Shown here in pieces: positions 995-54,602 of a stretch of 64,000 bases of DNA. The translations under genes and the position numbers were made by a program. The notes beneath the pieces are model-generated. The model made no database searches. It was not told the origin of the DNA and saw only the letters and a list, made by a program, of their open reading frames with translations. Source of the DNA: Malacoraja senta (lineage: Eukaryota); contig JAXLNO010002127.1 of NCBI GenBank assembly GCA_038087875.1, positions 310,001 through 374,000 on the forward strand, read 5' to 3'. Numbering within the stretch: position 1 is the first letter of the stretch; the number at the start of each line of letters is the position of its first letter.

Positions 995-1381
995 AAACGT
1001 CGCCTATCCATGTTCTCCACAGATGCTGCCTGACCCGCTGAGTCACTCCAGCACTCTGTGAAACATCACCTATCCATGTTCTCCACAGATGCTGCCTGAC
1101 CCGCTGAGTTACTCCAGTATTCTGTGAAACATCACCTATCCATGTTCTCCACAGATGCTGCCTGACCCGCTGAGTTACTCCAGTATTCTGTGAAACATCA
1201 CCTATCCATGTTCTCCACAGATGCTGCCTGTCCCACTGAGTTACTCCAGTATTCTGTGAAACATCACCTATCCATGTTCTCCACAGATGCTGCCTGACCC
1301 ACTGAGTTACTCCAGTATTCTGTGAAACATCACCTATCCATGTTCTCTCCAGAGATGCTGTCTGACCCACCCGCTGAGTTT
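995..1381 (+). repeat. Tandem array of a 66-bp unit (about 5.8 copies) derived from the Penelope terminal repeat
   Basis: Unit aaacatcacctatccatgttctccacagatgctgcctgacccgctgagttactccagtattctgtg starts at 995, 1061, 1127, 1193, 1259 and about 1326. Confidence 0.92.
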
Positions 1382-1416
1382 CGGGTCGAGACTCTACTTC
1401 AGACTCTGTCGTACCT

Positions 1417-4683: not shown

Positions 4684-5620
4684 ACAATAGACAATAGGCG
4701 CAGGAGTAGGCCATTCGGCCCTTCGAGCCAGCACCGCCATTCAATGTGATCATGGCTGATCGTCCCCAATCAGTACCCCGTTCCTGCCTTCTCCCCAGAT
4801 TCCCTGACTCCGCTATCTTTAAGAGACCTATCTAGCTCTCTCTTGAAAGTATCCAGAGAACCTGCCTCCACCGCCCTCTGAGGCAGAGAATTCCACAGAC
4901 TCACCACTCTCTGTGAGAAAAAGTGTTTCCTCGTCTCCGTCCTAAATGGCTTACCCCTTATTTTTAAACTGTGGCCCCTGGTTCTGGACTCCCCCAACAT
5001 CGGGAACATGTTTCCTGCCTCTAGTGTGTCCAAACCCTTAACAATCTTATATGTTTCAATGATATGCCCTCTCATCCTTCTAAATTCCAGAGTGTACAAG
5101 CCCAGCGACTTTGAGTCCTGAAAAGCGCTATATAAAAATAAAAATAAAATGTATTATTATTATTCTCTCAGCATATGACAGTCCCGCCATCCCGGGAATT
5201 AACCTTGTAAACCTACGCTGCACTCCCTCAATAGCAAGAATGTCCTTCCTCAAATTAGGGGACCAAAACTGCACACAATACTCCAGGTGTGGTCTCACTA
5301 GGGCCCTGTACAACTGCAGAAGGACATCTTTGCTCCTATACTCGACTCCTCTTGTTATAAAGGCCAACATGCCATTCGCTTTCTTCACTGCCTGCTGTAC
5401 CTGCATGCTTACTTTCATAGACTGATGAGCAAGGACCCTCAGATCCCGTTGCACTTCCCCTTTTCCCAACTTGACGCCATTTAGATAGTAATCTGCCTTC
5501 CTGTTTTTGATACCAAAGTGGACAACCTCACATTTATCCACATTAAACTTCATCTGCCATGCATCTGCCCACTCCCCCAACCTGTCCAAGTCATCCTGCA
5601 TTCTCATAGCATCCTCCTCA
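4684..5620 (-). mobile_element. CR1 LINE 3' fragment, interrupted by a short L2-like tail (about 5107-5164)
   Basis: MQDDLDRLGEWADAWQMKFNVDKCEVVHFG...LYRALVRPHLEYCVQFWSP...QRVVSLWNSLP. (ctattgt)n tail. Confidence 0.92.
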
Positions 5621-7954: not shown

Positions 7955-9072
7955 TTTAAACCAGCTCCTGCAGTTCCTTTTTACAACCCAGTGGTATGAA
8001 TATTGATTTCTCTAAATTCAAGTAGCCCCGGCATTCCCTCTCTCTCCATCCCTCCCCCACCCAAGTCGCAGCAGCTTCTCGTTTTCACCCAACAAACAAT
8101 GGCCTTTATCGTCTTTACTTTTTTGCATATCTTTCATTCATTGTTCTATCTCTCTCTTGTCTACATCTCTCGTTTCCCTTTCCCATGACTTTCAGTCTGA
8201 AGAATCTTCTCGACCCGAAACGTCACCCATTCCTTCCCTCCGGAGATGCTGCCTGTCCCGCTGAGTTACTCCAGCTTCTTAGGTCTGTCTTCGGTTTAAA
8301 CCAGCACCTGCAGCTCCTTGTGCAGGAAAGAACTGCAGATGCTGGTTTCAATCGAAGGTTGAGACAAACTGCTGGAGTAACTCAGCGGGACAGGCGGCAT
8401 CTCTGGAGAGAAGGAATGGGCGACATTTCGGGTCGAGGCCCTTCTTCAGACTGATGTTCAGTTCCTTCCTGCACATGGGTAGGTGACATTTTGGGTGAGT
8501 CTAAAGAGGGGTCCCGACCTGAAACGTCACCTATCCATGTTCTCTGGGGATGCTGCCCGACCCTCCGAGTTACTCCAGCACTTTGTGTCTTCATCTGCAT
8601 TGCCGGCAGCTTACATGTTGGCATTCAGACAGTTCTGACTGCTCCAGTTATCTTGGCAGAAGCAGCTGTGTTTACTGGCTGCTTCACTCCTCGTTAAAAT
8701 GCATTGACTGCAATAACAAACAGAAGTAAATAACACCTCATTACTAAATTGTCTTTGGTGTAAAGCCCTCAGCTTTGTGACTGATTCCTGGATCACATGC
8801 AGATTTATGAATGGCCTCTGATTTTCAGGAGACATTTGTTCAGGTCGAGATTGGTCATTCAACAGTGTTGCAGAAAGAGTTCTCTGGTCTAACAACGGGG
8901 AAAGGCAGGACAGAAAATGTTTGACATTCTGCTGACTTGAAAGGGCGGCACAGTGGCACAGCTGGTCGACCTGCTGCCGCACAGTGCCAGCCAGGGACCT
9001 GGGTTTGATTCTGGACTCGTGTGCTATTTGTGCGGAGTTTGCACGTTCTCCCTGAAGGATCTTCTTCTGAAG

Positions 9073-11898: not shown

Positions 11899-11972
11899 GA
11901 TGAAAAGGCGGAGGGATTCATCAGCCTGCCAGAGTTCAGGATCGACAGAGCAATTGAATGCAGACGGAAATA
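11899..11972 (+). CDS. CNKSR2: CNKSR2-like PH-domain exon DEKAEGFISLPEFRIDRAIECRRK(Y)
   Basis: ttcttccag|GAT...AAATA|gtaagt. Phase 0 in, phase 2 out. Continues the previous exon in frame; this frame is not in the ORF track. Confidence 0.93.
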
Positions 11973-12748: not shown

Positions 12749-12820
12749 TGCCTTCAAGGCTTGCCATCCAAAGATAAAGAGCTTCTACTTTGCCACCGAC
12801 TGTTTGGAGGAAATGAACAG
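12749..12820 (+). CDS. CNKSR2: CNKSR2-like PH-domain exon (Y)AFKACHPKIKSFYFATDCLEEMN(R)
   Basis: ttttcctgaag|TGCC...AACAG|gtaaaa. 72 nt, phase 2/2. Matches AFKACHPKIKSFYFA. Confidence 0.93.
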
Positions 12821-13616
12821 GTAAAAAGAGTTCCATTCTGACAGACATTATTCAAGCATTTGAACAGTAGCTTTAGGCTCAAGCGGCAATGAGTTTTATT
12901 TGACCACTTTATGCATGCTTCAATGGCACCTAAATGATAGATTATGCAGAGTAATCGGCAGTCACATTGTGATCACAATCACAGATTGAATCAGTGAAAT
13001 TGCAAAGTGCTTCCATTAACACAGTCTGATTACGCTAAATGTTTTAAAACAAGACGTGTGCGTTGCTGCTGGTCTTCTCCGCGAGAGGAAGTTGGTGAGA
13101 TAATCATCGTTGTTCAACGTAGACATTGAAATCCATTTGCAAAGAGCTTGCTGTGACCTCGCAGTTCATTTAATGTGAATGTGAATGTGAATGTGAATGC
13201 CTTGGTTGTTTACCTGCAGATGTGGAGAGTGTTTATTTCAGCGCCTTAAATGTTTCATCTTGAACTACATCTCTGAGCACGACTGCAGTCACTTCTCTCT
13301 ATCTGGGCACTTTGTTGTCAGTGTATAGAAATGTTGTGCGTACAGAATATGTGTATATGTGAAAATGGCTGTGTAGTCAACGAGAAAAGGCAAAGTTCAA
13401 GTTCAAGTTCACATTTATTGTCCCAAGCACCAGTTGGTACAGTGGGATTTGAGTTACCATACAGCCATACGAATAAAAAGAACACAACACACGATAGAGT
13501 TTAACATCAACATCCACCACAGTGGAATCAACGTTCCTCACTGTGATGGAAGGCAATAAAGTTCAGTCATCTTCCTCCTTTTGTCATCAAAGTATGTTTT
13601 AAACAGCCTGATATTA

Positions 13617-13825
13617 AAGGGTCTCGGCCTGAAATGTCATCTATTCCTTCGAAGGGTCTCGGCCTGAAATGTCATCTATTCCTTCGAAGGTTCTCGACTG
13701 GAATTGTCACCTATTCCTTCGAAGGGTCTCGACCCGAAACGTCACCTATTCCTTCGAAGGGTCTCGACCGGAAATGTCACCTATTCCTTGAAGGGTCTCG
13801 ACCCGAAACGTCACGTATTCCTTCA
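13617..13825 (+). repeat. Tandem array of a 35-bp unit (6 copies) covering the stem II-GAAA-cleavage-site part of the hammerhead motif
   Basis: aagggtctcgacccgaaacgtcacctattccttcg-like units start at 13617, 13652, 13687, 13722, 13757 and 13791. Confidence 0.88.
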
Positions 13826-14395: not shown

Positions 14396-15478
14396 CCTTC
14401 AAGGACAATTTTCTTTGACTGGCGTGGAGGGGGCATCTTGGACAGCGTGGGCGAGTTGGGCTGAAGGGCCTGTTTCCGTGCGGCGTGACTGTGCGGCTGG
14501 TTCTCTGGCTCACCTCCAACAAAGCACAGAGGGCGCCTGATGAATGATTTGTCGAACTGGACTTTGATGTCGACCAGATATTGCACCGCTCACTTCCAGA
14601 CACCCAGCACCTGCTGAAACAAGAAAGAGACCGGTTACACCAATGCGGCGTCTCATCATCTCCTTCCTTTCTACATCCCAATGGACCGGCTCTCTTGTCC
14701 TGTATCTGTATACTGTGGACAGTTCCCATTGGAATCATGGATTGTGTTTCTGCTGACTGGTTAGCACGCGACAAAAACCTTTCACCGTACCTCGGTACAC
14801 GTGACAATAACCTAGTCTGAAGAAGGGTTTTGGCCCGAAACGTTGCCTATTTCCTTCGCTCCATAGATGCTGCTGCACCTGCTGAGTTTCTCCAGCATTT
14901 TTGTGTACCTAAACTACTAAGTTGCCTCAGTTACTTGTGACCTGCTAGGAGAGGTTGACACCAATCGTGGCGACAGGTTCTGAGCCCCCATCACCACTCT
15001 CTGTGTTAAAGATTTGCCCCACACATCTCATTTAAACTTTGAGTTTGAGTTGAGTTTAGTTTATTGTCACGTGTAACGAGGTACAGTGAAAAGCGTTTGT
15101 TGCGTGCTACCCAGTCAGTGGAAAGGGCCTCTCTCACCTGTAAGCTATGCCCTCTACTCTTTGGCATTTCCACCCTGGGGAAAAAGGTTCTGACTATCTA
15201 CCTTACCGACACCTCTCTGCATTTTATATACCTACTGTATCAAGTGCCACCTCAATCTCCAATGATCTGGAGAAAATAATCCAAGTTTGTCCAACCTCCT
15301 CTCCAGCTAAGCCCCTCTAGTCCAGGCATCACTCTGGTAAACCCCTTCTCCTCTCCAAAGCCTCCATCCGCATCCTTCATGTAAAGGGGAGACCAGAACT
15401 GCACACCACACTCCACATATGGGCTCAACCAAGTTTCATAACACTGCAACATGACTTCCTGGTTTTAATTTTAGATCA

Positions 15479-16155
15479 GACAATAGACAATAGGAGCAGG
15501 AGTAGGCCATCCGGCCGTTCGAGCCAGCACCACCATTCAATGTGATCATCCCCAATCAGTACCCTGTTCCTGCCTTCTCCCCATGTCCCCTGACTCCGCT
15601 ATCTTTAAGAGCTCTATCTAACTCTCTCTTGAAAGCATCCAGAGAATTGGCCTCCACTGCCCTCTGAGGCAGAGAATTCCACAGATTCCCAACTCTCTGG
15701 ATGAAAAGGTTTTTCCTCATCTCCGTTCTAAATGGCCTACCCCTTATTCTTAAACTGTGGCCCCTGGTTCTGGACTCCCCCAACATTGGGGACATGTTTC
15801 CTGCCTCCAGCGCGTCCAATCCCTTAATAATCTTATATGTTTCAATAAAATCCCCTCCCATCCTTCTAAATTCCAGTGTATACGAGCCCAGTCACTCCAT
15901 TCTATCAACATATGACAGTCCCACCATCCCGGGAATTAACCTTGTGAACCCACACTGCACTCCCTCAATAGCAAGAATGTCCTTCCTCAAATTTGGAGAC
16001 CAAAACTGCACGCAATACTCCAGGTGTGGTCTCACTAGAGCCCTGTGCAACAGCAGGAGGACCTCTTTGCTCCTATACTCAACTCCTCTTGTTATGAAGG
16101 CCAACATGCCATTAGCTTTCTTCACTGCCTGCTGTACCCGCATGCTTACTTTCAG
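15479..16155 (-). mobile_element. CR1 LINE 3' fragment
   Basis: VQQAVKKANGMLAFITRGVEYRSK...WNSLPQRAVEA. Same subfamily as 4684-5620. Confidence 0.92.
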
Positions 16156-22506: not shown

Positions 22507-23210
22507 CTTCATGGAATGATGTACTTGCATCCTAGCTCTCTCTGTTCTGCATCACTGCACAGGGCCCCATCACTTACTGTGTAAGTCCTGTCCTGGTTTG
22601 ATGTGTTCTATTGAGAGTTGATCCATATTAAAGTATTCAATAGTTTAAAAAACAAAAGTGCTGGAGTAACTCAGCGGGTCAGGCAGCATCTGTGGAGGGA
22701 ATGGACAGGCGATGTTTCGGGTGGGGACCCTTCTTCAGACAGATTATAGTGAAGCTGGAAGAGAGGTGGTGGTGGGACAAAGCCTGACAAGTGAAAGGTG
22801 GAGACACAGGGAAATGCAGATGCTGGTTTACAAAAAAAAGAGACAAAGTGCTGAGTAACTCAGCAGATCAAGCAACATCTCGAGAGAATATATGGATAGA
22901 AGGCATTTTGGGTCAGGACCAAGAGCACTGTTGAACTACTATCTACCTCATTAGTGACCCTAGATGGGGCTTTGCTGGCTTTACCTTGCACTAAACGTTA
23001 TTCCCTTATCATGTATTTGTACACTGTAAATGGGTCGATTGTAATCATGTATTGTCTTTCCACTGACTGGATAGCACACAACAAAAAGCGTTTCACTGTA
23101 CCTCGGTACACGTGACAATAAACTAAACTGAACTGAACCCTGAATAGATTGAGAAGTTTTTAAGAAGGAACTGCAGGTGCTGGAACAATTGAAGGTTGAC
23201 AAAAATGCTG

Positions 23211-23332
23211 GAGAAACTCAGCGGGTGAGGCAGCATCTATGGAGCGAAGGAATAGATCTGAAGAAGGGTCGAGACCTGAAACGTCACCTATTCCTTTGCT
23301 CCGTAGATGCTGCCTCACCCGCTGAGTTTCTC
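23211..23332 (+). ncRNA. Candidate type I hammerhead ribozyme with about 47-bp stem I (Penelope-derived)
   Basis: Arm 23211-23257, CTGAAGA 23258-23264, A-GGGTC-ga-GACCT, GAAA 23278-23281, CGTC, then arm 23286-23332 complementary to the first arm. Confidence 0.55.
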
Positions 23333-25055
23333 GTAACCGAATAGGTTGAGGTGAGGGTTTGGGGGGACGGGAGGGGGGGGGGGGGGTGATTGGAACAGAC
23401 AGTGAGGCCAGGAATGTAAAGGAGAGAAAAGAGTGATAATGAAATGTAAAGCCAGAGGGAGGGATGTATGTGGCAGGGGATGGGTGGGGTGGGGGCAGGA
23501 GAAACAGGTGCGATAGGGGGGAAGGAGGAACAGGAAAAAAAAGACAGGAAATATATCATCAAGATCTCGCCCATGTTGACAAATAACAAGCTAGTTTCTG
23601 TGAGTACATTTTACTTGGAACAGGGCCTTGTTGAGACAACCTTTTGATGTCGGCCTGACTGCCTTTGAAGCATTCACTCGTGAGTTGGCTGATGTTCTGT
23701 ATCCCAATGATCACATACTCTTGCTACAAAGAAATCTAATTTGCCACTGATGCATTAGTGTTACGTCTCTCCATCTGAAATGCCCTTGGCCCAGACGACA
23801 GCAATTGCTTAATGGCCACATTTATTTCCAGAGTAGTAAACAACAAATTAAATGTTGTAATATCCTCCAATTGAAAAGCAAACTGGCGAGAGATTAAAGG
23901 AAGGAGAATGTTAATGAATTCCACACTTGCAGGCAATAGTGTCGGGAGCTACAGTGATGATACTCCGATCTGTTGGTTACACAAGGCTTGTTTAAAATGG
24001 AGCCAATCATTTGTAGCATTGGCAACAAGTCCAAGCATCAATTAGAATGACTGTGGCAATCAACCTTTCCCCTGCCGAGATTTATTGCAGTCATTTTTTT
24101 CTGTTGCATATTTTATTTCTGTCGGTGTTATTTCTCTTTAAAAAAAAAGGCAGTTTAGTAGCACATCGTACAGAAGCTGTGCTGTTAAATGATCAGTTTC
24201 AATACATATATTTCATCGGACTTGCTGATTAAATGTGGAGGATGCAACTGCAGATGCTGGTTTATACCGTAGATAGACACAAAATGTTGGAATCTCAGTG
24301 GGTCAGGCAGCATCTGTGGAGAGCAGCATTCCTGTCAGGCTACGGCCAGCCAATGAATCGCACGTCAGTCTGTGTTTGGTCACTCTGCCGTGATGGTTTA
24401 GTAAGGTGCCAAATCGAACTTTTGCAGATTTACTCACTTTGTGAAAGTCACTTGTTGAAGAATTGAATGCATAACTGTTGCGTCCCTCTCAAAATGCTGG
24501 AAAGCAGGATATCCACATTGATGCTGGGATACATCCCGGCTTTAGGAATGATCTGCCACTATTTGTGGTGGAACCAACCTAGACCTTATCTTCTGCATTG
24601 AAACCGAGTTAGTTCAAAATCTAACTGTTTCAATACAGCAGATAAGGTCGAAGATAAGGGATCCTCAAGGGAAATGTGATTACAATTTTAGTTTAGGAAG
24701 GAACTGCGGATACTGGTTTGCACCAACGATAGACACAAAATGCTGGAGTAACTCAGCAGGACAGGCAGCATCTCTGGAGAGAAGGAATGGGTGACGTTTC
24801 AGGTCGAGGCCCTTCTTCAGAGTAGTTTGGGATAAAGGAAACAAGAGACATAGACAATGATGTAAAGAGATAAAGAACAATGGGTCGAGACACTGCGTCA
24901 CCCATTCCTTCTAAATGAGTTACTACAGCATTTTGTGTCTATCTTCGATGACAATTTTAGTTTAGTTTTAAAGATACAGGGCGGAAACAGGTACTTCAGC
25001 CCACCGAGTCTGCGCCGACCAGCGATCCCCGCACATTAACACTATCCTACACACA

Positions 25056-27790: not shown

Positions 27791-28130
27791 CTGTGGTGCT
27801 GTGAGGCAGCAGCTCTACCGCGGCACCACTGTTCTAGGCTCTGTTCTATTCTTGAACACAGAAGGTAAGCACACACTTGTAACATTCATCCAAAGAATAG
27901 GCCGTGTTGCTTTGAAGGATATATTGCAGTTCCCTGTCCAACACGAGGGAATTGGTCACTCAAGTGTCACTGTACCTTACTTGGTGCATGTGACAATAAA
28001 TTTGAACTTGAACTTGAACTTTATCTCTCAGCGATGGCACACCTACTCCTGATGTCCGTCAGTAGTGAATGATGGACCAGGAGAGACTGGTGCAGTTGGT
28101 TTCGAAGATCTCCCAATGGGATATGCAATA

Positions 28131-28560
28131 TCTACACTGGAGTTTAGAAGGATGAGAGGGTATCTCATTGAAACATATAAGATTGTTAAGGGCTCGGACA
28201 CGCTAGAGGCAGGAAACATGTTCCCGATGTTGGGGGAATCCAGAACCAGGGGCCACAGTTTAAGAATAAGGAGTAAGCCATTTAGAACGGAGACGTGGAA
28301 ACACTTTTTCTCACAGAGAGTGGTGAGTCTGTGGAATTCTCTGCCTCAGAGGGCGGTGGAGGCAGGTTCTCTGGATGCTTTCAAGAGAGAGCTAGATAGG
28401 GCTCTTAAAAATAGCGGAGTCAGGTGATATGGGGAGAAGGCAGGAACGGGGTACTGATTGGGGATGATCAGCCATGATCACATTGAATGGCGGTGCTGGC
28501 CGTAAGGGTCAAATGGCCTACTCCTGCACCTATTGTCCATTGTCTATTGTCTATTGTCTA
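28131..28560 (+). mobile_element. CR1 3' fragment
   Basis: TLEFRRMRGYLIETYKIVKG...QRVVSLWNSLP and a (ctattgt)n tail. Confidence 0.9.
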
Positions 28561-30480: not shown

Positions 30481-30521
30481 TACTACACCCACTCAACCGC
30501 CTCTCTCCCTCTATGTTGTAG

Positions 30522-30592
30522 GTGGATGAATCGGCTGGGCCTGGCTGCTATTGGGTACGCTCCCGATGATAAGGTGACCAGACCCGACGAAG
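30522..30592 (+). CDS. CNKSR2: CNKSR2-like exon, end of PH domain (R)WMNRLGLAAIGYAPDDKVTRPDE(D)
   Basis: ctatgttgtag|GTGG...GAAG|gtgagc. 71 nt, phase 2/1. Contains the conserved Trp of the PH C-terminal helix. Confidence 0.88.
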
Positions 30593-33924: not shown

Positions 33925-34025
33925 ACTACTGGAGTGAGAGTGACCAAGAGGACGTGAATGACTCCTTGACGGTGAAGGCAGAAGGCCCGTCAACCGTGTG
34001 TGACACCTACCCCCGAACCCCTTCA
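33925..34025 (+). CDS. CNKSR2: CNKSR2-like exon (D)YWSESDQEDVNDSLTVKAEGPSTVCDTYPRTPS
   Basis: ccactttag|AC...TCA|gtaagt. 101 nt, phase 1/0. Has the DYWSESD and DTYPR motifs of CNKSR2. Confidence 0.9.
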
Positions 34026-35383: not shown

Positions 35384-35909
35384 GTGAATTCTTCCAGTCC
35401 CTTCCCTGAGCCGAAGCACGGGCGCCACTTCTCGAGCGAGTCCACGTACTCGCACTCGTCCGCGGAGGACTCGCGACACGAGGCGTCGGGGAGCACGCAC
35501 TCGTCCGGCTGCCGGTCCTCGTACAGGGAGCGGCGCTCGTGGCAGGACCTGATCGAGACACCGCTGACCAGCTCAGGCCTACACTTCCTGCAGACCATCC
35601 CGCTGGAGATGGAGTACGCCCCCGGCCGCACGGGGCCCATGTCGCCCGAGAGGAGGCGGCAGGCCACCCTGCCCGTCCAGAGGCACCACCACCACGACCG
35701 CGACGGGCCCTTCCCCCTGGTGGAGTGCGAGCGGGGGCACAACAGCACGCACGCCAGAGTCTGCAAGCAGCGCAGCCAAAGCCTACCGAGGAACCGCGAG
35801 GCCAGGATCAAAGCGCACGTGCTGCCTCCCGGGCTGGCGGAGGAGAGGTCGGAGGATGACGAGATCCAGGGCATCAAGCAAAATGGCGGCGGCAGCAGCA
35901 GCAGGCAAG
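35384..35909 (+). CDS. CNKSR2: CNKSR2-like large exon VNSSSPFPEPKH...RRSWQDLIETPLTSSGLHFLQTIPLE...GGGSSSRQ
   Basis: ttccctacag|GTG...CAAG|gtcagt. 526 nt, phase 0/1. RRSWQDLIETPLTSSGLH is characteristic of CNKSR2. Confidence 0.92.
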
Positions 35910-37083
35910 GTCAGTGCTGGCTGGCTACATCCCTCTGTGTGTGTACAGTGAGTGATTGGGCAGCACTCAGTGTGACTGCGGTCCACTTCATTTGTCCTCT
36001 CGCATTTCACATTCTCTGTACATCACAAAAGGCTTCGTAGCCAACAAAATTGGTTTTGTACCAAACAGCAAGCTGCTGGGGGAACTCACGTGGAGGCAGA
36101 TGGGGGTGGTCAAACTCTGTGAGCTGAGAATGAGCAGGGAGCTGAGGGCAAGTAAGAATTTCATTGTTCTGGTTCTGGCAATAAAACACTCTTGACTCCT
36201 GAGTGCCATAGGTTCATAAGCTACAGCAGCAGAATTAGGCCATTCGGCCCATCGTCTGCGCCGCCATCCAATCATGGCTGATCTATCTTTTCCCCCTCAA
36301 CCCCATTCTCCTGCCTTCTCCCCATAACCCCTGACACCCGCACTAATCATAAATCTGTCAATCCGCGCCTGGTAAAATATTCATTGGCGTTTGTCGGACA
36401 ATGTAGAGGAGGCCACATGGAGAGGACCAATTGCAACAGACAAGGTTGGAGGAGGAGCACGTGCATCTCTGTCATAGAAACATAGAAAATAGGTGCAGGA
36501 GGAGGCCATTCGACCCTTCGAGCCAGCACCCGCCATTCATTGTGATGGGCGTACCAGGATGGGCTGTTTGGGTCAGCCACATTGGGAATATTGCGAGTAG
36601 TTCCGGTCGCCCCATTACAGGGAAGATTTGGAGGCTTCGGAAATGGTGTAGAGGAGGTTTACCAGAATACTGCATGGATTAGAGGGCATTAGCAGCAGGA
36701 CAGACTTGGATTGTTTCTTCTGGAACACAGGAAGTTGAGGGGAGACCGGATAGAAGTATATAAAGTTATGAGAAGCATAGATAGCGTGGACAGCCGATCT
36801 GGCTGTAATGTCACTTTCGGGGATCAATGTACCTGCTCTCCTTGATCCCTCTCCTCTGCAACACCCCCCTACCATTTAGTTGAGTTTAGTTTATTGTCAC
36901 GTGATACAGAGGTGCAGTGTAAAGCTTTTGTTGCGTGCTAACCAGACAATGGAAGGACGATACATGTTTACAATCGAGCCATCCACAGATATATGATCAG
37001 GGAATAACGTGAATAACGTCTGATGCAAGGTAAAGCCTGTGAAGACACTGCGAATGTCCTGCCAACATCTACACTCAGTAAGA

Positions 37084-40410: not shown

Positions 40411-40689
<279 letters not shown>

Positions 40690-41225: not shown

Positions 41226-41768
41226 GAACATAGAAACATAGAAACATAGAAAATAGGAGCAGGAGTAGGCCATTCGGCCCTTCGAGCCTGCACCGCCATT
41301 CAATATGATCATGGCTGATCATCCAACTCAGTATCCTGTACCTGCCTTCTCTCCATACCCCCTGATCCCTTTAGCCACAAGGGCCACATCTAACTCCCTC
41401 TTAAATATAGCCAATGAACTGGCCTCAACTACCTTCTGTGGCAGAGAGTTCCAGAGATTCACCACTCTCTGTGTGAAAAATGTTTTTCTCATCTCGGTCC
41501 TAAAGGATTTCCCCTTAATCCTTAAACTGTGACCCCTTGTCCTGGACTTCCCCAACATCGGGAACAATCTTCCTGCATCTAGCCTGTCCAACCCCTTAAG
41601 AATTTTGTAAGTTTCTATAAGATCCCCCCTCAATCTTCTAAATTCTAGCGAGTACAAGCCGAGTCTATCCAGTCTTTCTTCATATGAAAGTCCTGACATC
41701 CCAGGAATCAATCTGGTGAACCTTCTCTGTACTCCCTCTATGGCAAGAATGTCTTTCCTCAGATTTGG
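41226..41768 (-). mobile_element. Young CR1 3' fragment
   Basis: Uninterrupted frame IPGMSGLSYEERLDRLGLYSLEFRRLRGDLIETYKILKG...WNSLPQKVVEA, with a (tttctatg)n tail. Confidence 0.92.
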
Positions 41769-42001
41769 AAGGATTTCCTCAGAACTGTATCATTAAGGAA
41801 GGTAATCGAGACACATTATTTTTACATCCTCCCCCGTGTGAATCTAGAGCCCTATTCCCCACCACCAGAAGGAATTAGATGCTGGAAGACAATTAGAATA
41901 TTCAAAGTGAGGATATGTAAATAAGATGCAGATTAGGCATGAATATGAGTAACATAAACCCAAATTATTGGTGCAATAATTGTACTTTATAACTTTATTA
42001 G

Positions 42002-42446
42002 AAATAGAAACATAGAAAATAGGTGCAGGAGGAGGCCATTCGGCCCTTCGAGCCAGCACCGCCATTCATTGTGATCATGGCTGATGAACTGGCCTCCTCC
42101 TGCACTGTGCCTGCCTTCTCCCCACATCCCTTGACTCCACTAGCCCCTAGAGCTCTATCTAACTCTCTCTTGAATCCATCCAGTGACTTGGCCTCCACTG
42201 CCCTCTGTGGCAGGGAATTACATAAATTCACAACTCTCTGGGTGAAAATGTTTTTTCTCACCTCAGTCTTAAATGACCTCCCCTTTATTCTAAGACTGTG
42301 GCCCCTGGTTCTGGACTCGCCCAACATTGGGAACATTTTTTCTGCATCTAGCTTGTCCAGTCCTTTTTATAATTTTATATGTTTCTATAAGATATCCCCT
42401 CATCCTTCTAAACTCCAGTGAATACAAGCCTAGTCTTTTCAATCTT
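42002..42446 (-). mobile_element. CR1 3' fragment
   Basis: MFPMLGESRTRGHSLRIKG...TQRVVNL and tail. Confidence 0.88.
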
Positions 42447-47540: not shown

Positions 47541-48310
47541 ACCTACCTACTCTGGCGACTCGTTTCATGTATCCACCAACTCCTGAGTGATAACGTTGCC
47601 CCTCAGGTTCCTATTAAATCTTTCCACTCTCACTTTAAACCTATGTCTCTGGTTCCCCAACCCTCAGTAAAATACTCTGTGCATTTACCTTATCAATTCC
47701 AACTGGTGGAATTTTGCTCTTAATTCAGTACATGCCGACTTTCTTACAGAGCCACATTGAACACCTTAAGAAATGTAACCAAGAGTTTGGTAATGTCAGG
47801 AATTTCTCTTTACTCAAAAGCCAATGGAAATCAATGGATCACTGCTCCCAACAAGATTTTTCAGCCTTAGCCAGTAGAACATTTTGGCTAAGTTTGGTGA
47901 CCTCTTTGTAGTGTAAGGACATTAAGGATCAGGTAGTCAAGGAGGATAAGGATCATGCACTATATCATGCACTTTATCTTGCACTAAACGTTATTCCCTT
48001 TATCCTGTATCCAGACACGGTGGACGGATCGATTGTAATCATGTATAATCTTTCCGCTGACTGGATAACACGCATCAAAAGCTTTTCATTGTACCTTGGT
48101 ACACGTGACAATAAACTAAACTGAACTAAAGCTAAAACTAAATGAACATAGAGCACACAGTTGCTACTTACTGTAAATACCTACATTCGTATGAGTGTAA
48201 CAATGGGGTTGCACAGTAACAGCGGCCTTATCGATCTTGTCCATTGAGTCAAGTCTTCTGAAAAATGGAAGAATTTTGCATTGCTCACTTTAATCTATTT
48301 ACTTATTCAG

Positions 48311-48526
48311 GCAAAAGAAGGAGACCTGGTGATAATCAACCAGGTTCTCGAAGATCCCTACATGACATCCAAACAATTTCGAGAGTGGAAGTGGCTGAAT
48401 CACGAGTTTTTCCTGGACATTTGTGGATACAGTCCTGTGATGAAGCCACAGAATGGTGCATCTGAACTAGTCTCGCCAGCACCTCTCTTGACTCATACGC
48501 ACTCGTTCATCGAAACCCATGTGTGA
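48311..48526 (+). CDS. CNKSR2: CNKSR2-like terminal coding exon AKEGDLVIINQVLEDP...LLTHTHSFIETHV* (class I PDZ-binding motif)
   Basis: cttattcag|GCA...GTGTGA. The C-terminus HTHSFIETHV matches the CNKSR2/MAGUIN-1 end (HTHSYIETHV). Confidence 0.93.
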   Translation, partial: AKEGDLVIINQVLEDPYMTSKQFREWKWLNHEFFLDICGYSPVMKPQNGASELVSPAPLLTHTHSFIETHV

Positions 48527-53161: not shown

Positions 53162-53636
53162 ATCATAAGATCATAAGTGATAGGAGTTGAATTAGGCCAT
53201 TCAGTCCCTCAAGTCTACTCCGCCATTCAGCCCATCAAGTCTACTCCGCCATTCAATCATGGCTGACCTATCTCTCCCTCCAAACCCCATTCTCCTGCCT
53301 TCTCCCCATAACCCCTGGCACCCGTACTAATCAAGAATCTATCTATGCCTTAAATATATCATTGACTTGGCCTCCACAGCTTTCTGTGGAAATAATTCCA
53401 CAGATTCACCACCACTGACTAAATAAATTCCTCCTCATCTCCTTCCTAAAAGAACGTCCTTTAATTCTGAAGCTATGACCTCTAGTCCTAGACTCTCCCA
53501 CTCGTGGAAACATCCTCTCCACATCCATTCTGTCCAAGCCTTTCACTATTCTGTATGTTTCAATGAGGTGCCCCCTCATTCTTCTAAACTCCAGTGCATA
53601 TAGGCCCAGTGCCATCAAACGCTCATCACATGTTAA
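53162..53636 (-). mobile_element. CR1 3' fragment
   Basis: LTCDERLMALGLYALEFRRMRGHLIETYRIVKGLD... Confidence 0.85.
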
Positions 53637-54602
53637 CTTACTCGGCCCGAAACGTTGCCTATTTCCCTCGCTCCATAGATGCTGCTGCACCCGCTGAGTT
53701 TCTCCAGCATTTTTATCTACCTTTGATACGTGACGTTTCAGGTCAGGACCCTTTTTCAGACTGACCCGACCCAAAATGTCACCGACCCATGTCCTTCAGA
53801 GATGCTGCCAGACTCACTGAGTTACTCCAGCACATTGTGTTTTAGGTGCTAAGATTAGTTTGACGACTTGATTCTCTCGTTGCCCATATCTCACTATTAT
53901 TTGAGTATATTCCAATTGTCAGCCCTTTGCATTGAACTGAACTGCAATTCATTTGCCTCAGTTCTACATGTTTCATCTATTCTGGTGCTTCTGTACTTCC
54001 CTGATTGTTTCATCAATGCTTACTGGTCCTCCTCTCCAATCCCAAATGCACACATAGTCAATTGTCAGTGCAGTTCTGAACACAGGTTATTTAAGTGCAT
54101 TCTTCTTGTCGAGTCCACACACAAGATTAGAAGTTGTTCAGCCAGAGCTGAACACACACTCGGCATCTGCACAATTGTGTGTCTTGTCACTTCTTGTGGT
54201 TTTTGTGCGTGGTAGTAGAAAGATTGGTGGAAACAGGGCCGTGACGTGAACGCTCTTTCCTTGACCCCATTTAAGTGTATTGAAAACAGCAGGCAGCATT
54301 CAGTGAGTCATCTCAACCACAATATATTTCTGGTCTTATGGCCAATTCTTTATCCATCTACACTTATTACTTGACATATGCAGTGTTTAACCCGATTTAA
54401 CAGCCATTAATGGATAGGTTTGCAGAAATGCAGGGACAATATATCACATGAGCTCTTGGAACAACGAAAATCTCCAATCTCCTTGACATTTTGGTGTGGC
54501 AGTCAGAAACCGTGTTAGTTACATGGTGGACTTCTATATGATAATCCTCAGACTTGTTCCCAATTATAGTTACAGGCATAAACCAAATAATCCGTCAAGT
54601 TT

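What the first reader, a model, noticed from the sequence alone, without database searches (positions are those of the whole stretch)
23154..23338. Fold-back copy places an intact hammerhead core on a 47-bp stem I in the sense strand of a CNKSR2-like intron
Seen: 23211-23257 is the reverse complement of 23286-23332 (one mismatch, two G-U pairs). The arms abut the core exactly: ...ggaatagat-CTGAAGA-agggtcgagacct-GAAA-cg-TC-acctattcc... Predicted cleavage is after C23285. The unit is flanked by gaatag(a/g)ttgag (23142-23153, 23339-23350). Inference: the inversion has supplied the long stem I that ordinary copies lack. This makes it the best candidate for an active ribozyme in the pre-mRNA, with stem III donated by a second sense-strand copy such as 14817-14847 in the same intron. 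Cleavage could affect splicing of the 17.7-kb intron.
Basis: partly seen in the sequence, partly recalled or inferred. Interest (0 to 1): 0.72.

Follow-up and report, generated by a model that had tools for sequence, protein, structure and literature searches.

The report
Fold-back retroelement insertion with minimal hammerhead
The 47-bp hairpin around a complete hammerhead core is real. It is one head-to-head insertion of a very abundant short Penelope-like retroelement, of a kind seen 14 times in this window, and it lacks the third helix needed for self-cutting, so it is most likely inert in the gene's intron.

Summary
- 23211-23257 pairs with 23286-23332: 44 Watson-Crick pairs, 2 G-U, 1 mismatch.
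- The arms abut CTGAAGA-A-[helix II]-GAAA-CG-TC (23258-23285).
- 12-nt direct repeats (11/12 identical) flank 23154-23338.
- The core lies on the sense strand of a ~17.7-kb intron of a CNK-family gene.

The thing is ordinary for this genome. The right arm is a copy of a ~135-nt repeat that covers 9.9% of the window (73 hits). Its motif matches the published helix-III-less "min-HHR" of Penelope-like elements (PLEs). The left arm is an inverted, 5'-truncated copy. Head-to-head pairs occur 14 times in the window, against 2 tail-to-tail. This is the known PLE insertion signature.

An active ribozyme that affects splicing is unlikely:
- helix III is absent in cis;
- a trans ACGU duplex is worth only -1.7 to -3.1 kcal/mol;
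- the pair next to the core in helix II is G-U, not G-C;
- no Rfam hammerhead model matches;
- no RNA data were available.

An earlier report of this scan read another locus of this genome the same way. One lead is left open: several truncated copies begin exactly at the predicted cleavage site.

The parts
23142..23153 (.). Left copy of the 12-bp target-site duplication (GAATAGATTGAG)
   Evidence: 11/12 identical to 23339-23350 and directly flanks the unit
23154..23257 (-). Inverted, 5'-truncated copy of the repeat (element positions ~33-140). It reaches the element's 3' end (...AAAAACTT on the minus strand). Its inner end is the complement of A1.1, the first nucleotide after the predicted cleavage site. 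It supplies the 5' strand of helix I.
   Evidence: nhmmer hit 23158-23255 minus strand, HMM 35-134. Junction read. Other genomic copies continue past 23252 with the ordinary antisense core (loose ends).
23211..23257 (+). 5' strand of the 47-bp helix I
23258..23264 (+). Hammerhead core box CUGAAGA (C3-A9). Also the 5' end of the sense copy of the element.
   Evidence: The family's 5'-complete arms start at T/CTGAAGA.
23265..23265 (+). Extra unpaired A between A9 and G10.1, a hallmark of PLE min-HHRs
   Evidence: Sequence. Column conserved at 0.94 in the family. Feature described in PMC4209133.
23266..23277 (+). Helix II: GGGU/ACCU (4 bp, with G10.1-U11.1 wobble next to the core) and loop CGAG
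   Evidence: Predicted in both folds. Family consensus is GGGTCTCGACCC with paired columns 0.89 and loop 0.70 conserved.
23278..23285 (+). GAAA (G12-A15.1), C15.2-G16.2 palindrome, U16.1, C17. Predicted cleavage is after 23285. There is no helix III hairpin.
   Evidence: Only 2 nt lie between A15.1 and U16.1.
23286..23332 (+). 3' strand of helix I. With 23258-23285 it forms the sense copy of the element (positions 5-79), which is 3'-truncated.
   Evidence: nhmmer hit 23256-23332 plus strand, HMM 3-79
23333..23338 (.). GTAACC, six letters not matching the element or the target (filler or short tail)
23339..23350 (.). Right copy of the target-site duplication (GAATAGGTTGAG)
   Evidence: A same-species contig (X19) spans 23306-23465 with 0 differences.
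12750..12818 (+). Upstream flanking exon of the host gene (approximate bounds; encodes AFKACHPKIKSFYFA..., second half of the PH domain)
30515..30570 (+). Downstream flanking exon (approximate bounds; encodes RWMNRLGLAAIGYA...)

Best explanation
23154-23338 is a single old insertion, with a 12-bp target-site duplication, of an extremely abundant ~135-nt non-autonomous retroelement. The element's 5' end carries a Penelope-type minimal hammerhead: CUGAAGA, one extra A, a 4-bp helix II, then GAAAC/GUC with no helix III.

The insertion consists of two copies head to head. One is an inverted 5'-truncated copy (23154-23257). The other is 5'-complete and 3'-truncated (23258-23332). Each arm holds element sequence that the other lacks, so the pair was not made by one cDNA snapping back on itself. 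Inferred mechanism: both 3' ends of a staggered target break primed reverse transcription, and the two cDNAs were joined at their 3' ends. The centre reads GATC, a 4-nt palindrome.

The inverted arm happens to begin at the nucleotide after the cleavage site and the sense arm begins at C3. The join therefore automatically makes a perfect helix I that abuts the core.

In the pre-mRNA the sequence should fold into a 47-bp hairpin with a 28-nt apical loop. Without helix III it is not expected to self-cleave at a meaningful rate. It is most likely a neutral intronic transposon remnant.

Shown: the anatomy, the family membership of both arms, the excess of head-to-head pairs, and the gene strand. 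Inferred: Penelope-like mobilisation, the two-cDNA mechanism, and the lack of activity.
For: Family and motif:
- The family gives 73 nhmmer hits, 9.9% of the window. Raw summed contig depth over the repeat bins is about 5 to 6 orders of magnitude above the neighbouring unique bins in all three genomic DNA runs, which come from three organisms (the tool warns this is not a copy number).
- The motif matches the published PLE min-HHR hallmarks: no helix III, palindromic 15.2-16.2, and an unpaired nucleotide between 9 and 10.1. In family columns the core is conserved at 0.94, helix II pairs at 0.89 and its loop at 0.70.

Insertion form:
- There are 14 head-to-head pairs against 2 tail-to-tail (binomial p = 0.004). 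In most, one arm reaches the element's 5' end and the other is truncated at positions 16-41.
[quoted passage not shown] A PLE protein cleaves and extends both target strands in vitro (PMC11167929).
- The right arm alone has element positions 5-32 and the left arm alone has 80-140.
- The target-site duplication is 11/12 identical.

Against ribozyme activity:
- No Rfam hammerhead match at the gathering score or at E<=10.
- The hammerhead-like secondary structure scores -14.4 kcal/mol against a minimum of -17.2 that pairs core letters UGA with UCA.
- The ACGU self-duplex scores -1.7 to -3.1 kcal/mol.
- Single min-HHRs showed no detectable cleavage and dimers low cleavage in vitro.
Against: - No Penelope ORF (reverse transcriptase plus GIY-YIG endonuclease) lies in the window, so the link to PLEs rests on motif and insertion architecture only.
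- No RNA data were obtained, so inactivity is inferred and not shown.
- The core is fully intact, including its CpG, and this is the one copy in the window with a stable helix I. A protein-assisted or chaperoned reaction, as reported for the Anolis PLE hammerhead, cannot be excluded.
- The central junction itself was not spanned by an independent contig.
Confidence: 0.8

Rival explanations
1. The fold-back makes this copy an active hammerhead in the pre-mRNA. Helix III is formed in trans with another sense-strand copy in the same intron, for example 14817-14844. Cleavage after C23285 then influences splicing of the 17.7-kb intron.
For: - All core letters are intact, and this is the only copy in the window with a helix I longer than 3 bp.
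- Sense-strand copies with an intact ACGU palindrome exist in the same intron: 13736, 13805, 14837, 19189.
- Dimeric action is the accepted model for this hammerhead class.
- Weak hint: intact cores are rarer on the gene's sense strand, 2/18 against 8/17, Fisher p = 0.027.
Against: - The trans helix III is 4 bp, worth -1.7 to -3.1 kcal/mol, and ACGU occurs everywhere, so there is no specific partner.
- Candidate partner copies lack helix I themselves.
- G10.1-U11.1 replaces the conserved G-C.
- A continuous 47-bp helix has no internal loop to contact loop II.
- Published min-HHRs are inactive as monomers and weak as dimers.
- Hammerhead cleavage within introns did not impair splicing in vivo.
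- The strand asymmetry vanishes when core identity is compared as a continuous measure.
Confidence: 0.05
2. The relevant property is the 47-bp near-perfect double-stranded RNA and not the ribozyme. In the pre-mRNA the hairpin is a substrate for A-to-I editing or for Drosha/Dicer-type processing into small RNAs, as happens with other intronic inverted-repeat transposons.
For: - A very stable hairpin is predicted: -103.7 kcal/mol, z = -13.4.
- Rfam's only sub-threshold matches are long-hairpin microRNA precursor models, 38-44 bits against gathering scores of 73-96. These reflect shape only.
- That long intronic inverted repeats are edited or diced is general knowledge and was not tested here.
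Against: There is no RNA, small-RNA or editing data. The microRNA matches are far below threshold and to plant families. Thirteen other head-to-head pairs in the same window would do the same, so nothing singles this one out.
Confidence: 0.1
3. The fold-back is an inherited, transposing unit: a palindromic master element in which the inverted arm restores helix I so that the family's hammerhead can work. It is not a by-product of this one insertion.
For: - The target-site duplication flanks the whole unit.
- Ordinary copies have almost no helix I, which leaves open how the family's conserved core could ever function.
Against: - Every head-to-head junction in the window is different.
- The arms differ in extent, 33-140 against 5-79. 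A transcript of this unit would lack a normal 3' end on one side.
- An earlier follow-up of this scan on another palindromic copy also concluded that it was made at insertion (s1-200023; not independent evidence).
Confidence: 0.04
4. The palindrome is an assembly artefact, such as a chimeric or hairpin long read.
For: No independent contig spans the central junction. Palindromes are a known artefact class.
Against: - The 11/12 target-site duplication lies exactly at the unit's ends.
- The arms differ at 3 transitions and in extent, which a read-through artefact would not produce.
- A same-species contig crosses the right boundary with 0 differences.
- Fourteen similar structures with different junctions lie in the window.
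Confidence: 0.01

Closest known systems
Minimal hammerhead motifs (min-HHR) of metazoan Penelope-like elements (Cervera & De la Pena 2014, PMC4209133; Lunse et al. 2017, cited in PMC6765202)
   Same: Type I layout. Full catalytic core. No helix III, with palindromic C15.2-G16.2 (GAAAC/GUC). An unpaired nucleotide between A9 and G10.1. Massive genome-wide copy number, mostly as solitary or opposed motifs. Presumed to act as dimers.
   Different: Helix II is 4 bp, where many published families have 6-8 bp. Ordinary copies here have only 1-3 bp of helix I, where 4-5 bp is reported (2 bp in D. virilis). This copy has G10.1-U11.1. No PLE ORF lies nearby. The carrier is a ~135-nt non-autonomous element and not a pLTR of a full PLE.
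Complex tandem/inverted insertion architecture of Penelope-like elements (Evgen'ev & Arkhipova 2005; Craig et al. 2021, PMC8557442)
   Same: An inverted 5'-truncated copy lies immediately adjacent to the 5' end of another copy, which creates an inverted repeat. Partial tandems also occur in the window. A target-site duplication is present.
   Different: No 30-40-bp 'tail' is seen, only 6 unexplained letters (GTAACC). Both arms are short non-coding copies.
Non-LTR retrozymes (Cervera & de la Pena 2020, PMC7229834; Li et al. 2026 preprint, 10.64898/2026.07.22.740005)
   Same: Short non-autonomous repeats with type I hammerheads, related to PLE pLTRs. The preprint reports them in one chondrichthyan species.
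   Different: Retrozymes are head-to-tail tandem units whose hammerheads cut out monomers that circularise. This locus is a head-to-head pair with a single core.
Conserved intronic hammerheads of amniotes (Rfam Hammerhead_HH9 / HH10; De la Pena & Garcia-Robles 2010)
   Same: A hammerhead core on the sense strand of an intron of a protein-coding gene.
   Different: Those have a proper helix III and loop-loop contacts, are single-copy and conserved across species, and match Rfam models. This one has none of these.
L1 'twin priming' inversions
   Same: An insertion with an inverted 5' part and a target-site duplication, made by priming from both target strands.
   Different: Twin priming yields adjacent, non-duplicated parts of one RNA. 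Here both arms cover the same element segment (positions ~33-79).

Membership tests
Hammerhead ribozyme (canonical, as in Rfam Hammerhead_1/3/HH9/HH10) | Invariant core: C3 U4 G5 A6 N7 G8 A9, G12 A13 A14, A15.1-U16.1, H17 | tested here: met
   CUGAAGA 23258-64, GAAA 23278-81, U23284, C23285. One extra A lies after A9.
Hammerhead ribozyme (canonical, as in Rfam Hammerhead_1/3/HH9/HH10) | Three helices around the core, including helix III closing A15.1-U16.1 | tested here: not met
   Helix I has 47 positions and helix II 4 bp. Only CG lies between A15.1 and U16.1, so no hairpin is possible.
Hammerhead ribozyme (canonical, as in Rfam Hammerhead_1/3/HH9/HH10) | Match to a curated covariance model | tested here: not met
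   No hammerhead family at the gathering score in the whole window, nor at E<=10 in 23100-23400.
Hammerhead ribozyme (canonical, as in Rfam Hammerhead_1/3/HH9/HH10) | Site-specific self-cleavage | not testable with these tools
   No RNA run holds the stretch, and only contigs were available.
PLE-type minimal hammerhead (min-HHR) | No helix III; positions 15.2-16.2 palindromic | tested here: met
   GAAAC-GUC at 23278-23285. Criterion from PMC4209133.
PLE-type minimal hammerhead (min-HHR) | [quoted passage not shown] | tested here: met
   A23265. The family column is conserved at 0.94.
PLE-type minimal hammerhead (min-HHR) | Conserved G10.1-C11.1 pair | tested here: not met
   The family consensus has G-C (column 24 is C in 0.78 of copies). 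This copy has G23266-U23277.
PLE-type minimal hammerhead (min-HHR) | Located in the pLTR of an element encoding RT plus GIY-YIG endonuclease | tested here: inconclusive
   I recognised no Penelope-type ORF when reading the list of ORFs of 70 aa or more; this was judged by eye and not by a family scan. Only 4 ORFs were scanned against Pfam, and the two retroelement-like fragments among them matched nothing. The rest of the genome could not be searched.
PLE insertion architecture | Inverted 5'-truncated copy immediately adjacent to the 5' end of another copy | tested here: met
   23158-23255 (minus, HMM 35-134) abuts 23256-23332 (plus, HMM 3-79). There are 14 such pairs against 2 tail-to-tail.
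PLE insertion architecture | 30-40-bp 'tail' extension at one end of the unit | tested here: not met
   Only GTAACC (23333-23338) is unaccounted for.
Non-LTR retrozyme | Head-to-tail tandem units, each with a hammerhead, giving unit-length circular RNA | tested here: not met
   The locus is a head-to-head pair with one core. Circular RNA is not testable here.

The most novel reading that the evidence does not exclude
The exact abutment of the arms on the core may be a footprint of hammerhead cleavage in vivo. The inverted arm begins at A1.1, the first nucleotide after GUC, as expected if a cDNA ran off the 5' end of a self-cleaved element RNA. In this window, two to four further truncated copies besides this locus begin at that same position: 60789- exactly, and 53161-, 4378+ and 522- within 1-3 nt of ambiguity. 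If this holds genome-wide, it would be genomic evidence that Penelope-type minimal hammerheads cut their RNA during retrotransposition. It would also mean that fold-back insertions regenerate a complete helix I.
Probability: 0.15. Interest if true: 0.6.

Novelty: new member of a known kind. Interest (0 to 1): 0.25.

Why it matters
As it stands, this is one more copy of a known class, a Penelope-type minimal hammerhead in a fold-back insertion. It adds little beyond showing how abundant the class is in a cartilaginous-fish genome, about 10% of this window. It would matter in two cases. First, if the copy cleaved the pre-mRNA, which I think unlikely. Second, if truncation points of the family pile up at the predicted cleavage site genome-wide. 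That would bear on an open question, namely whether and when PLE hammerheads act in vivo. The 2024 Anolis study found no RNA-seq reads beginning or ending at the cleavage site (PMC11167929).

Tried and rejected
- Rfam at the gathering score over the window and at E<=10 over 23100-23400 gave no hammerhead family. The only matches were sub-threshold long-hairpin microRNA models, which I take as shape matches.
- RNA evidence: the look-up of sequencing runs returned no run on record as RNA. The 'RNA?' run X1 behaved as DNA. All runs are contigs, which cannot show ends. Expression, cleavage and editing are therefore untested.
- Snap-back (self-primed hairpin cDNA) as the origin of the fold-back is rejected for this locus, because each arm contains element sequence absent from the other.
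- Annealing of two cDNAs through the helix II palindrome is rejected as a general rule, because the junctions are not centred on it.
- I looked for a helix I in ordinary copies and found only 1-3 bp. By eye, neither the ~100-nt conserved upstream part of the long form nor the element's 3' end in a tandem or circular arrangement offers a complement to ACCCAUUCC.
- Strand bias of intact cores (2/18 sense, 8/17 antisense, p = 0.027) did not survive a continuous comparison of core identity (0.90 against 0.92, p = 0.37).
- The paper by Lunse et al. 2017 (PMC5785218) is not held.
- The gene name rests on the PH-domain matches and on my memory of CNKSR2's sequence and ETHV end.
Full report
**Observation**

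The repeat finder reports arms 23211-23255 and 23288-23332, 45 nt and 96% complementary. Counting outwards from the core, 23257-23286 to 23211-23332 gives 47 positions: 44 Watson-Crick pairs, two G-U pairs (23246-23297, 23240-23303) and one mismatch, A23256-C23287, at the second position from the core. Pairing ends abruptly beyond that.

Between the arms lie CTGAAGA, A, GGGTCGAGACCT, GAAA, CG and TC, at 23258-23285. The 12-mers that flank 23154-23338 are GAATAGATTGAG and GAATAGGTTGAG, 11/12 identical. Folded as RNA, 23154-23345 has a minimum free energy of -103.7 kcal/mol (z = -13.4), and the long stem is in both the minimum-energy and the centroid structures.

**Gene context**

Plus-strand ORF pieces encode a PH domain. 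The piece at 3992-4180 matches Pfam PH at E = 6e-7, and its best solved relative is IPCEF1/CNK3 at E = 2e-12. Further pieces lie at about 11914-11970, 12750-12818, 30515-30570, 33927-34000, 35384-35950, 40411-40600 and 48281-48526, the last ending ...IETHV*.

From memory, these resemble CNKSR2. I read the exons one by one and ran no search on a joined protein. The locus lies between the exons at about 12818 and about 30515, an intron of about 17.7 kb, and the core is on the sense strand.

**What the arms are**

The right arm is an ordinary copy of a very abundant repeat. The 17-mer GAAACGTCACCTATTCC occurs 32 times at up to 3 mismatches, where 0.13 is expected. An HMM built from 14 copies finds 73 hits that cover 9.9% of the window. 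Raw summed contig depth over the repeat bins is about 5 to 6 orders of magnitude above the neighbouring unique bins in all three genomic DNA runs, which come from three organisms. The tool warns that this is not a copy number.

The consensus begins (CAG)T-CTGAAGA-A-GGGTCTCGACCC-GAAAC-GTC-ACC... and runs about 135 nt to ...GCAGTTCCTTCC/TTACAC. Some copies have about 100 nt more upstream.

The left arm (23158-23255, minus strand) matches HMM positions 35-134. The right arm (23256-23332, plus strand) matches positions 3-79. At 23252 most other genomic copies continue with the ordinary antisense core (loose-end consensus ATAGGCAACGTTTCGGGTCGAAACCC). The left arm is therefore a truncated inverted copy.

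**What the motif is**

Cervera & De la Pena (PMC4209133) defined the 'min-HHR' of metazoan Penelope-like elements (PLEs). Its features are:
- the full catalytic boxes;
- no helix III;
- palindromic 15.2-16.2;
- a conserved unpaired nucleotide between A9 and G10.1;
- a conserved G10.1-C11.1 pair;
- a short helix I;
- thousands of mostly solitary copies per genome.

This family fits all of these. The exceptions are a shorter helix II (4 bp) and, in ordinary copies, only 1-3 contiguous helix-I pairs.

Across 55 aligned copies the core boxes are the best-kept columns. CTGAAGA scores 0.94, the extra A 0.94 and GAAA 0.91. The paired positions of helix II score 0.89 and its loop 0.70. The CpG of ACGT scores 0.80, as expected from CpG decay. 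The 20 nt after the cleavage site score 0.79. This is the pattern expected of a structured motif kept in the master copies.

No Rfam hammerhead model matches, either at the gathering score or at E<=10. That fits the absent helix III.

**The fold-back is the rule, not an exception**

Among neighbouring hits no more than 25 nt apart, 14 are head-to-head, with their hammerhead ends facing each other. Two are tail-to-tail and 12 are tandem (binomial p = 0.004 for head-to-head against tail-to-tail).

Reading the junctions shows a common pattern. In most pairs one arm reaches the element's 5' end, at T/CTGAAGA, and the other is 5'-truncated at positions 16-41. Every junction is different.

Craig et al. 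[quoted passage not shown] For this locus a simple snap-back of one cDNA is excluded. Only the right arm has positions 5-32, and only the left arm has positions 80-140. I infer two cDNAs, each primed from one 3' end of a 12-bp staggered break and joined at their 3' ends. The centre reads GATC, a 4-nt palindrome that could have served as microhomology. This mechanism is inference.

No PLE ORF lies in the window. I judged this by reading the list of ORFs of 70 aa or more, and only four ORFs were scanned against Pfam. The attribution to PLEs therefore rests on the motif and the insertion architecture.

**Why the arms abut the core exactly**

The sense arm starts at C3, the family's usual 5' end. 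The inverted arm, read in the sense direction, is ATCTATTCC..., against the family's ACCTATTCC.... It therefore begins at A1.1, the nucleotide after GUC, with one transition. The variant GTCATCTATTCC also exists at 13631 and 13666. Joining the reverse complement of 'A1.1 onwards' to 'C3 onwards' necessarily creates a helix I flush with the core.

**Is it an active ribozyme?**

In favour:
- every invariant letter is present;
- the CpG in ACGU is intact;
- of the 10 intact-looking cores in the window, this is the only one with a real helix I.

Against:
1. Helix III cannot form in cis. Only two nucleotides separate A15.1 and U16.1.
2. The trans helix with another copy is ACGU/ACGU, worth -1.7 to -3.1 kcal/mol. 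This is negligible for a partner 8.4 kb away or on another molecule. ACGU is not specific to element copies, and the candidate partner copies lack helix I themselves.
3. G10.1-U11.1 replaces the conserved G-C pair.
4. A continuous 47-bp helix offers no internal loop for the loop I-loop II contact that natural type I hammerheads use at physiological Mg2+. This point is from established knowledge.
5. In a 54-nt construct, the hammerhead-like secondary structure scores -14.4 kcal/mol. The minimum is -17.2 and pairs core U4-G5-A6 with U16.1-C17-A1.1.
6. Published min-HHRs gave no detectable cleavage as single motifs and low cleavage as dimers. The Anolis PLE hammerhead cleaved only with its protein present, and no RNA-seq reads began or ended at its site.

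Even if slow cleavage occurred, hammerhead cleavage inside an intron left splicing intact in vivo. Only a fast ribozyme abolished it (Dye et al. 2006 and Bentley's group, as summarised in PMC2995048).

I could get no RNA evidence. No listed run is on record as RNA, and only contigs were available.

**DNA runs**

A same-species contig (run X19) covers 23306-23465 with no differences and so crosses the right end of the unit. No contig spans the centre. A contig from a related organism (run X22, about 4% diverged) aligns from exactly 23339 onwards and leaves 32 of its letters unaligned on the left. This would fit an empty site in that species, but I could not check it.

**Leads not settled**

- Several truncated copies start at the predicted cleavage site: 23255- and 60789- cleanly, and 53161-, 4378+ and 522- within 1-3 nt. 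With about 30 truncated copies spread over about 85 positions, about 0.35 per position is expected. The sample is small and the boundaries are partly ambiguous.
- Intact cores are rarer on the gene's sense strand, 2/18 against 8/17 (p = 0.027). Core identity compared as a continuous measure does not differ, 0.90 against 0.92 (p = 0.37), and the sense copies are slightly more diverged overall.

**Earlier scan note**

A follow-up on another locus of this genome (s1-200023) reached the same reading: a palindromic mini-Penelope insertion made at the moment of insertion. I reproduced the head-to-head pattern here independently. I did not use that note as evidence.

**Verdict**

The structure is real and this copy is the best-formed hammerhead in the window. 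It is nevertheless a routine Penelope-like fold-back insertion of a known minimal-hammerhead class, with no helix III and no evidence of activity. It is a new member of a known kind.

Noticed in passing
window 23255(-), 60789(-), 53161(-), 4378(+), 522(-): 5'-truncated copies of the repeat begin at element position 33, the nucleotide after the predicted GUC cleavage site. Two are clean and three are ambiguous by 1-3 nt. This could be a footprint of cDNA run-off on self-cleaved RNA.
   Followed up: partly
window 1060-1382 and 13616-13790: Internal pieces of the element are amplified as tandem arrays. One has a 66-nt unit (element positions 25-91, five to six copies). The other has a 35-nt unit (positions 10-44, six copies) that repeats helix II, GAAAC/GUC and the start of the helix I strand, without the CUGAAGA box.
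   Followed up: no
window 14760-14816 and 23085-23136: Two copies of the hammerhead element (14814 and the fold-back at 23154) sit 6-30 nt downstream of the same other repeat's tail (...TACCTCGGTACACGTGACAATAA..., followed here by ACTGA-type repeats). This may reflect an insertion preference for such tails.
   Followed up: no
window 23339 onward (run X22): A contig from a related organism aligns from exactly the first base after the insertion unit and has 32 unaligned letters on its left. The orthologous site there may lack the insertion.
   Followed up: no
whole window, hammerhead-core-bearing copies: Intact cores are 2 of 18 on the gene's sense strand against 8 of 17 on the antisense strand (Fisher p = 0.027). 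Average core identity does not differ between strands, so the asymmetry is weak.
   Followed up: partly
window 8194-8452: Two full-length copies lie tail to tail and overlap by 9 nt at their 3' ends. This forms another ~130-bp inverted repeat of the opposite polarity, one of only two such pairs.
   Followed up: no
window 23355-23390: A G-rich tract, including a run of about 18 G, starts 5 nt after the right target-site duplication.
   Followed up: no
window 4770-5099(-), 15556-15861(-), 28065-28427(+), 41328-41711(-), 41998-42336(-), 53406-53774(-): There are repeated ORF fragments with the same C-terminal sequence (...EFRRMRG.LIETYKI.KGLD...GESRTRGHS...). They look like the end of a retroelement ORF. 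The one fragment scanned, 4770-5099(-), has no Pfam match.
   Followed up: no
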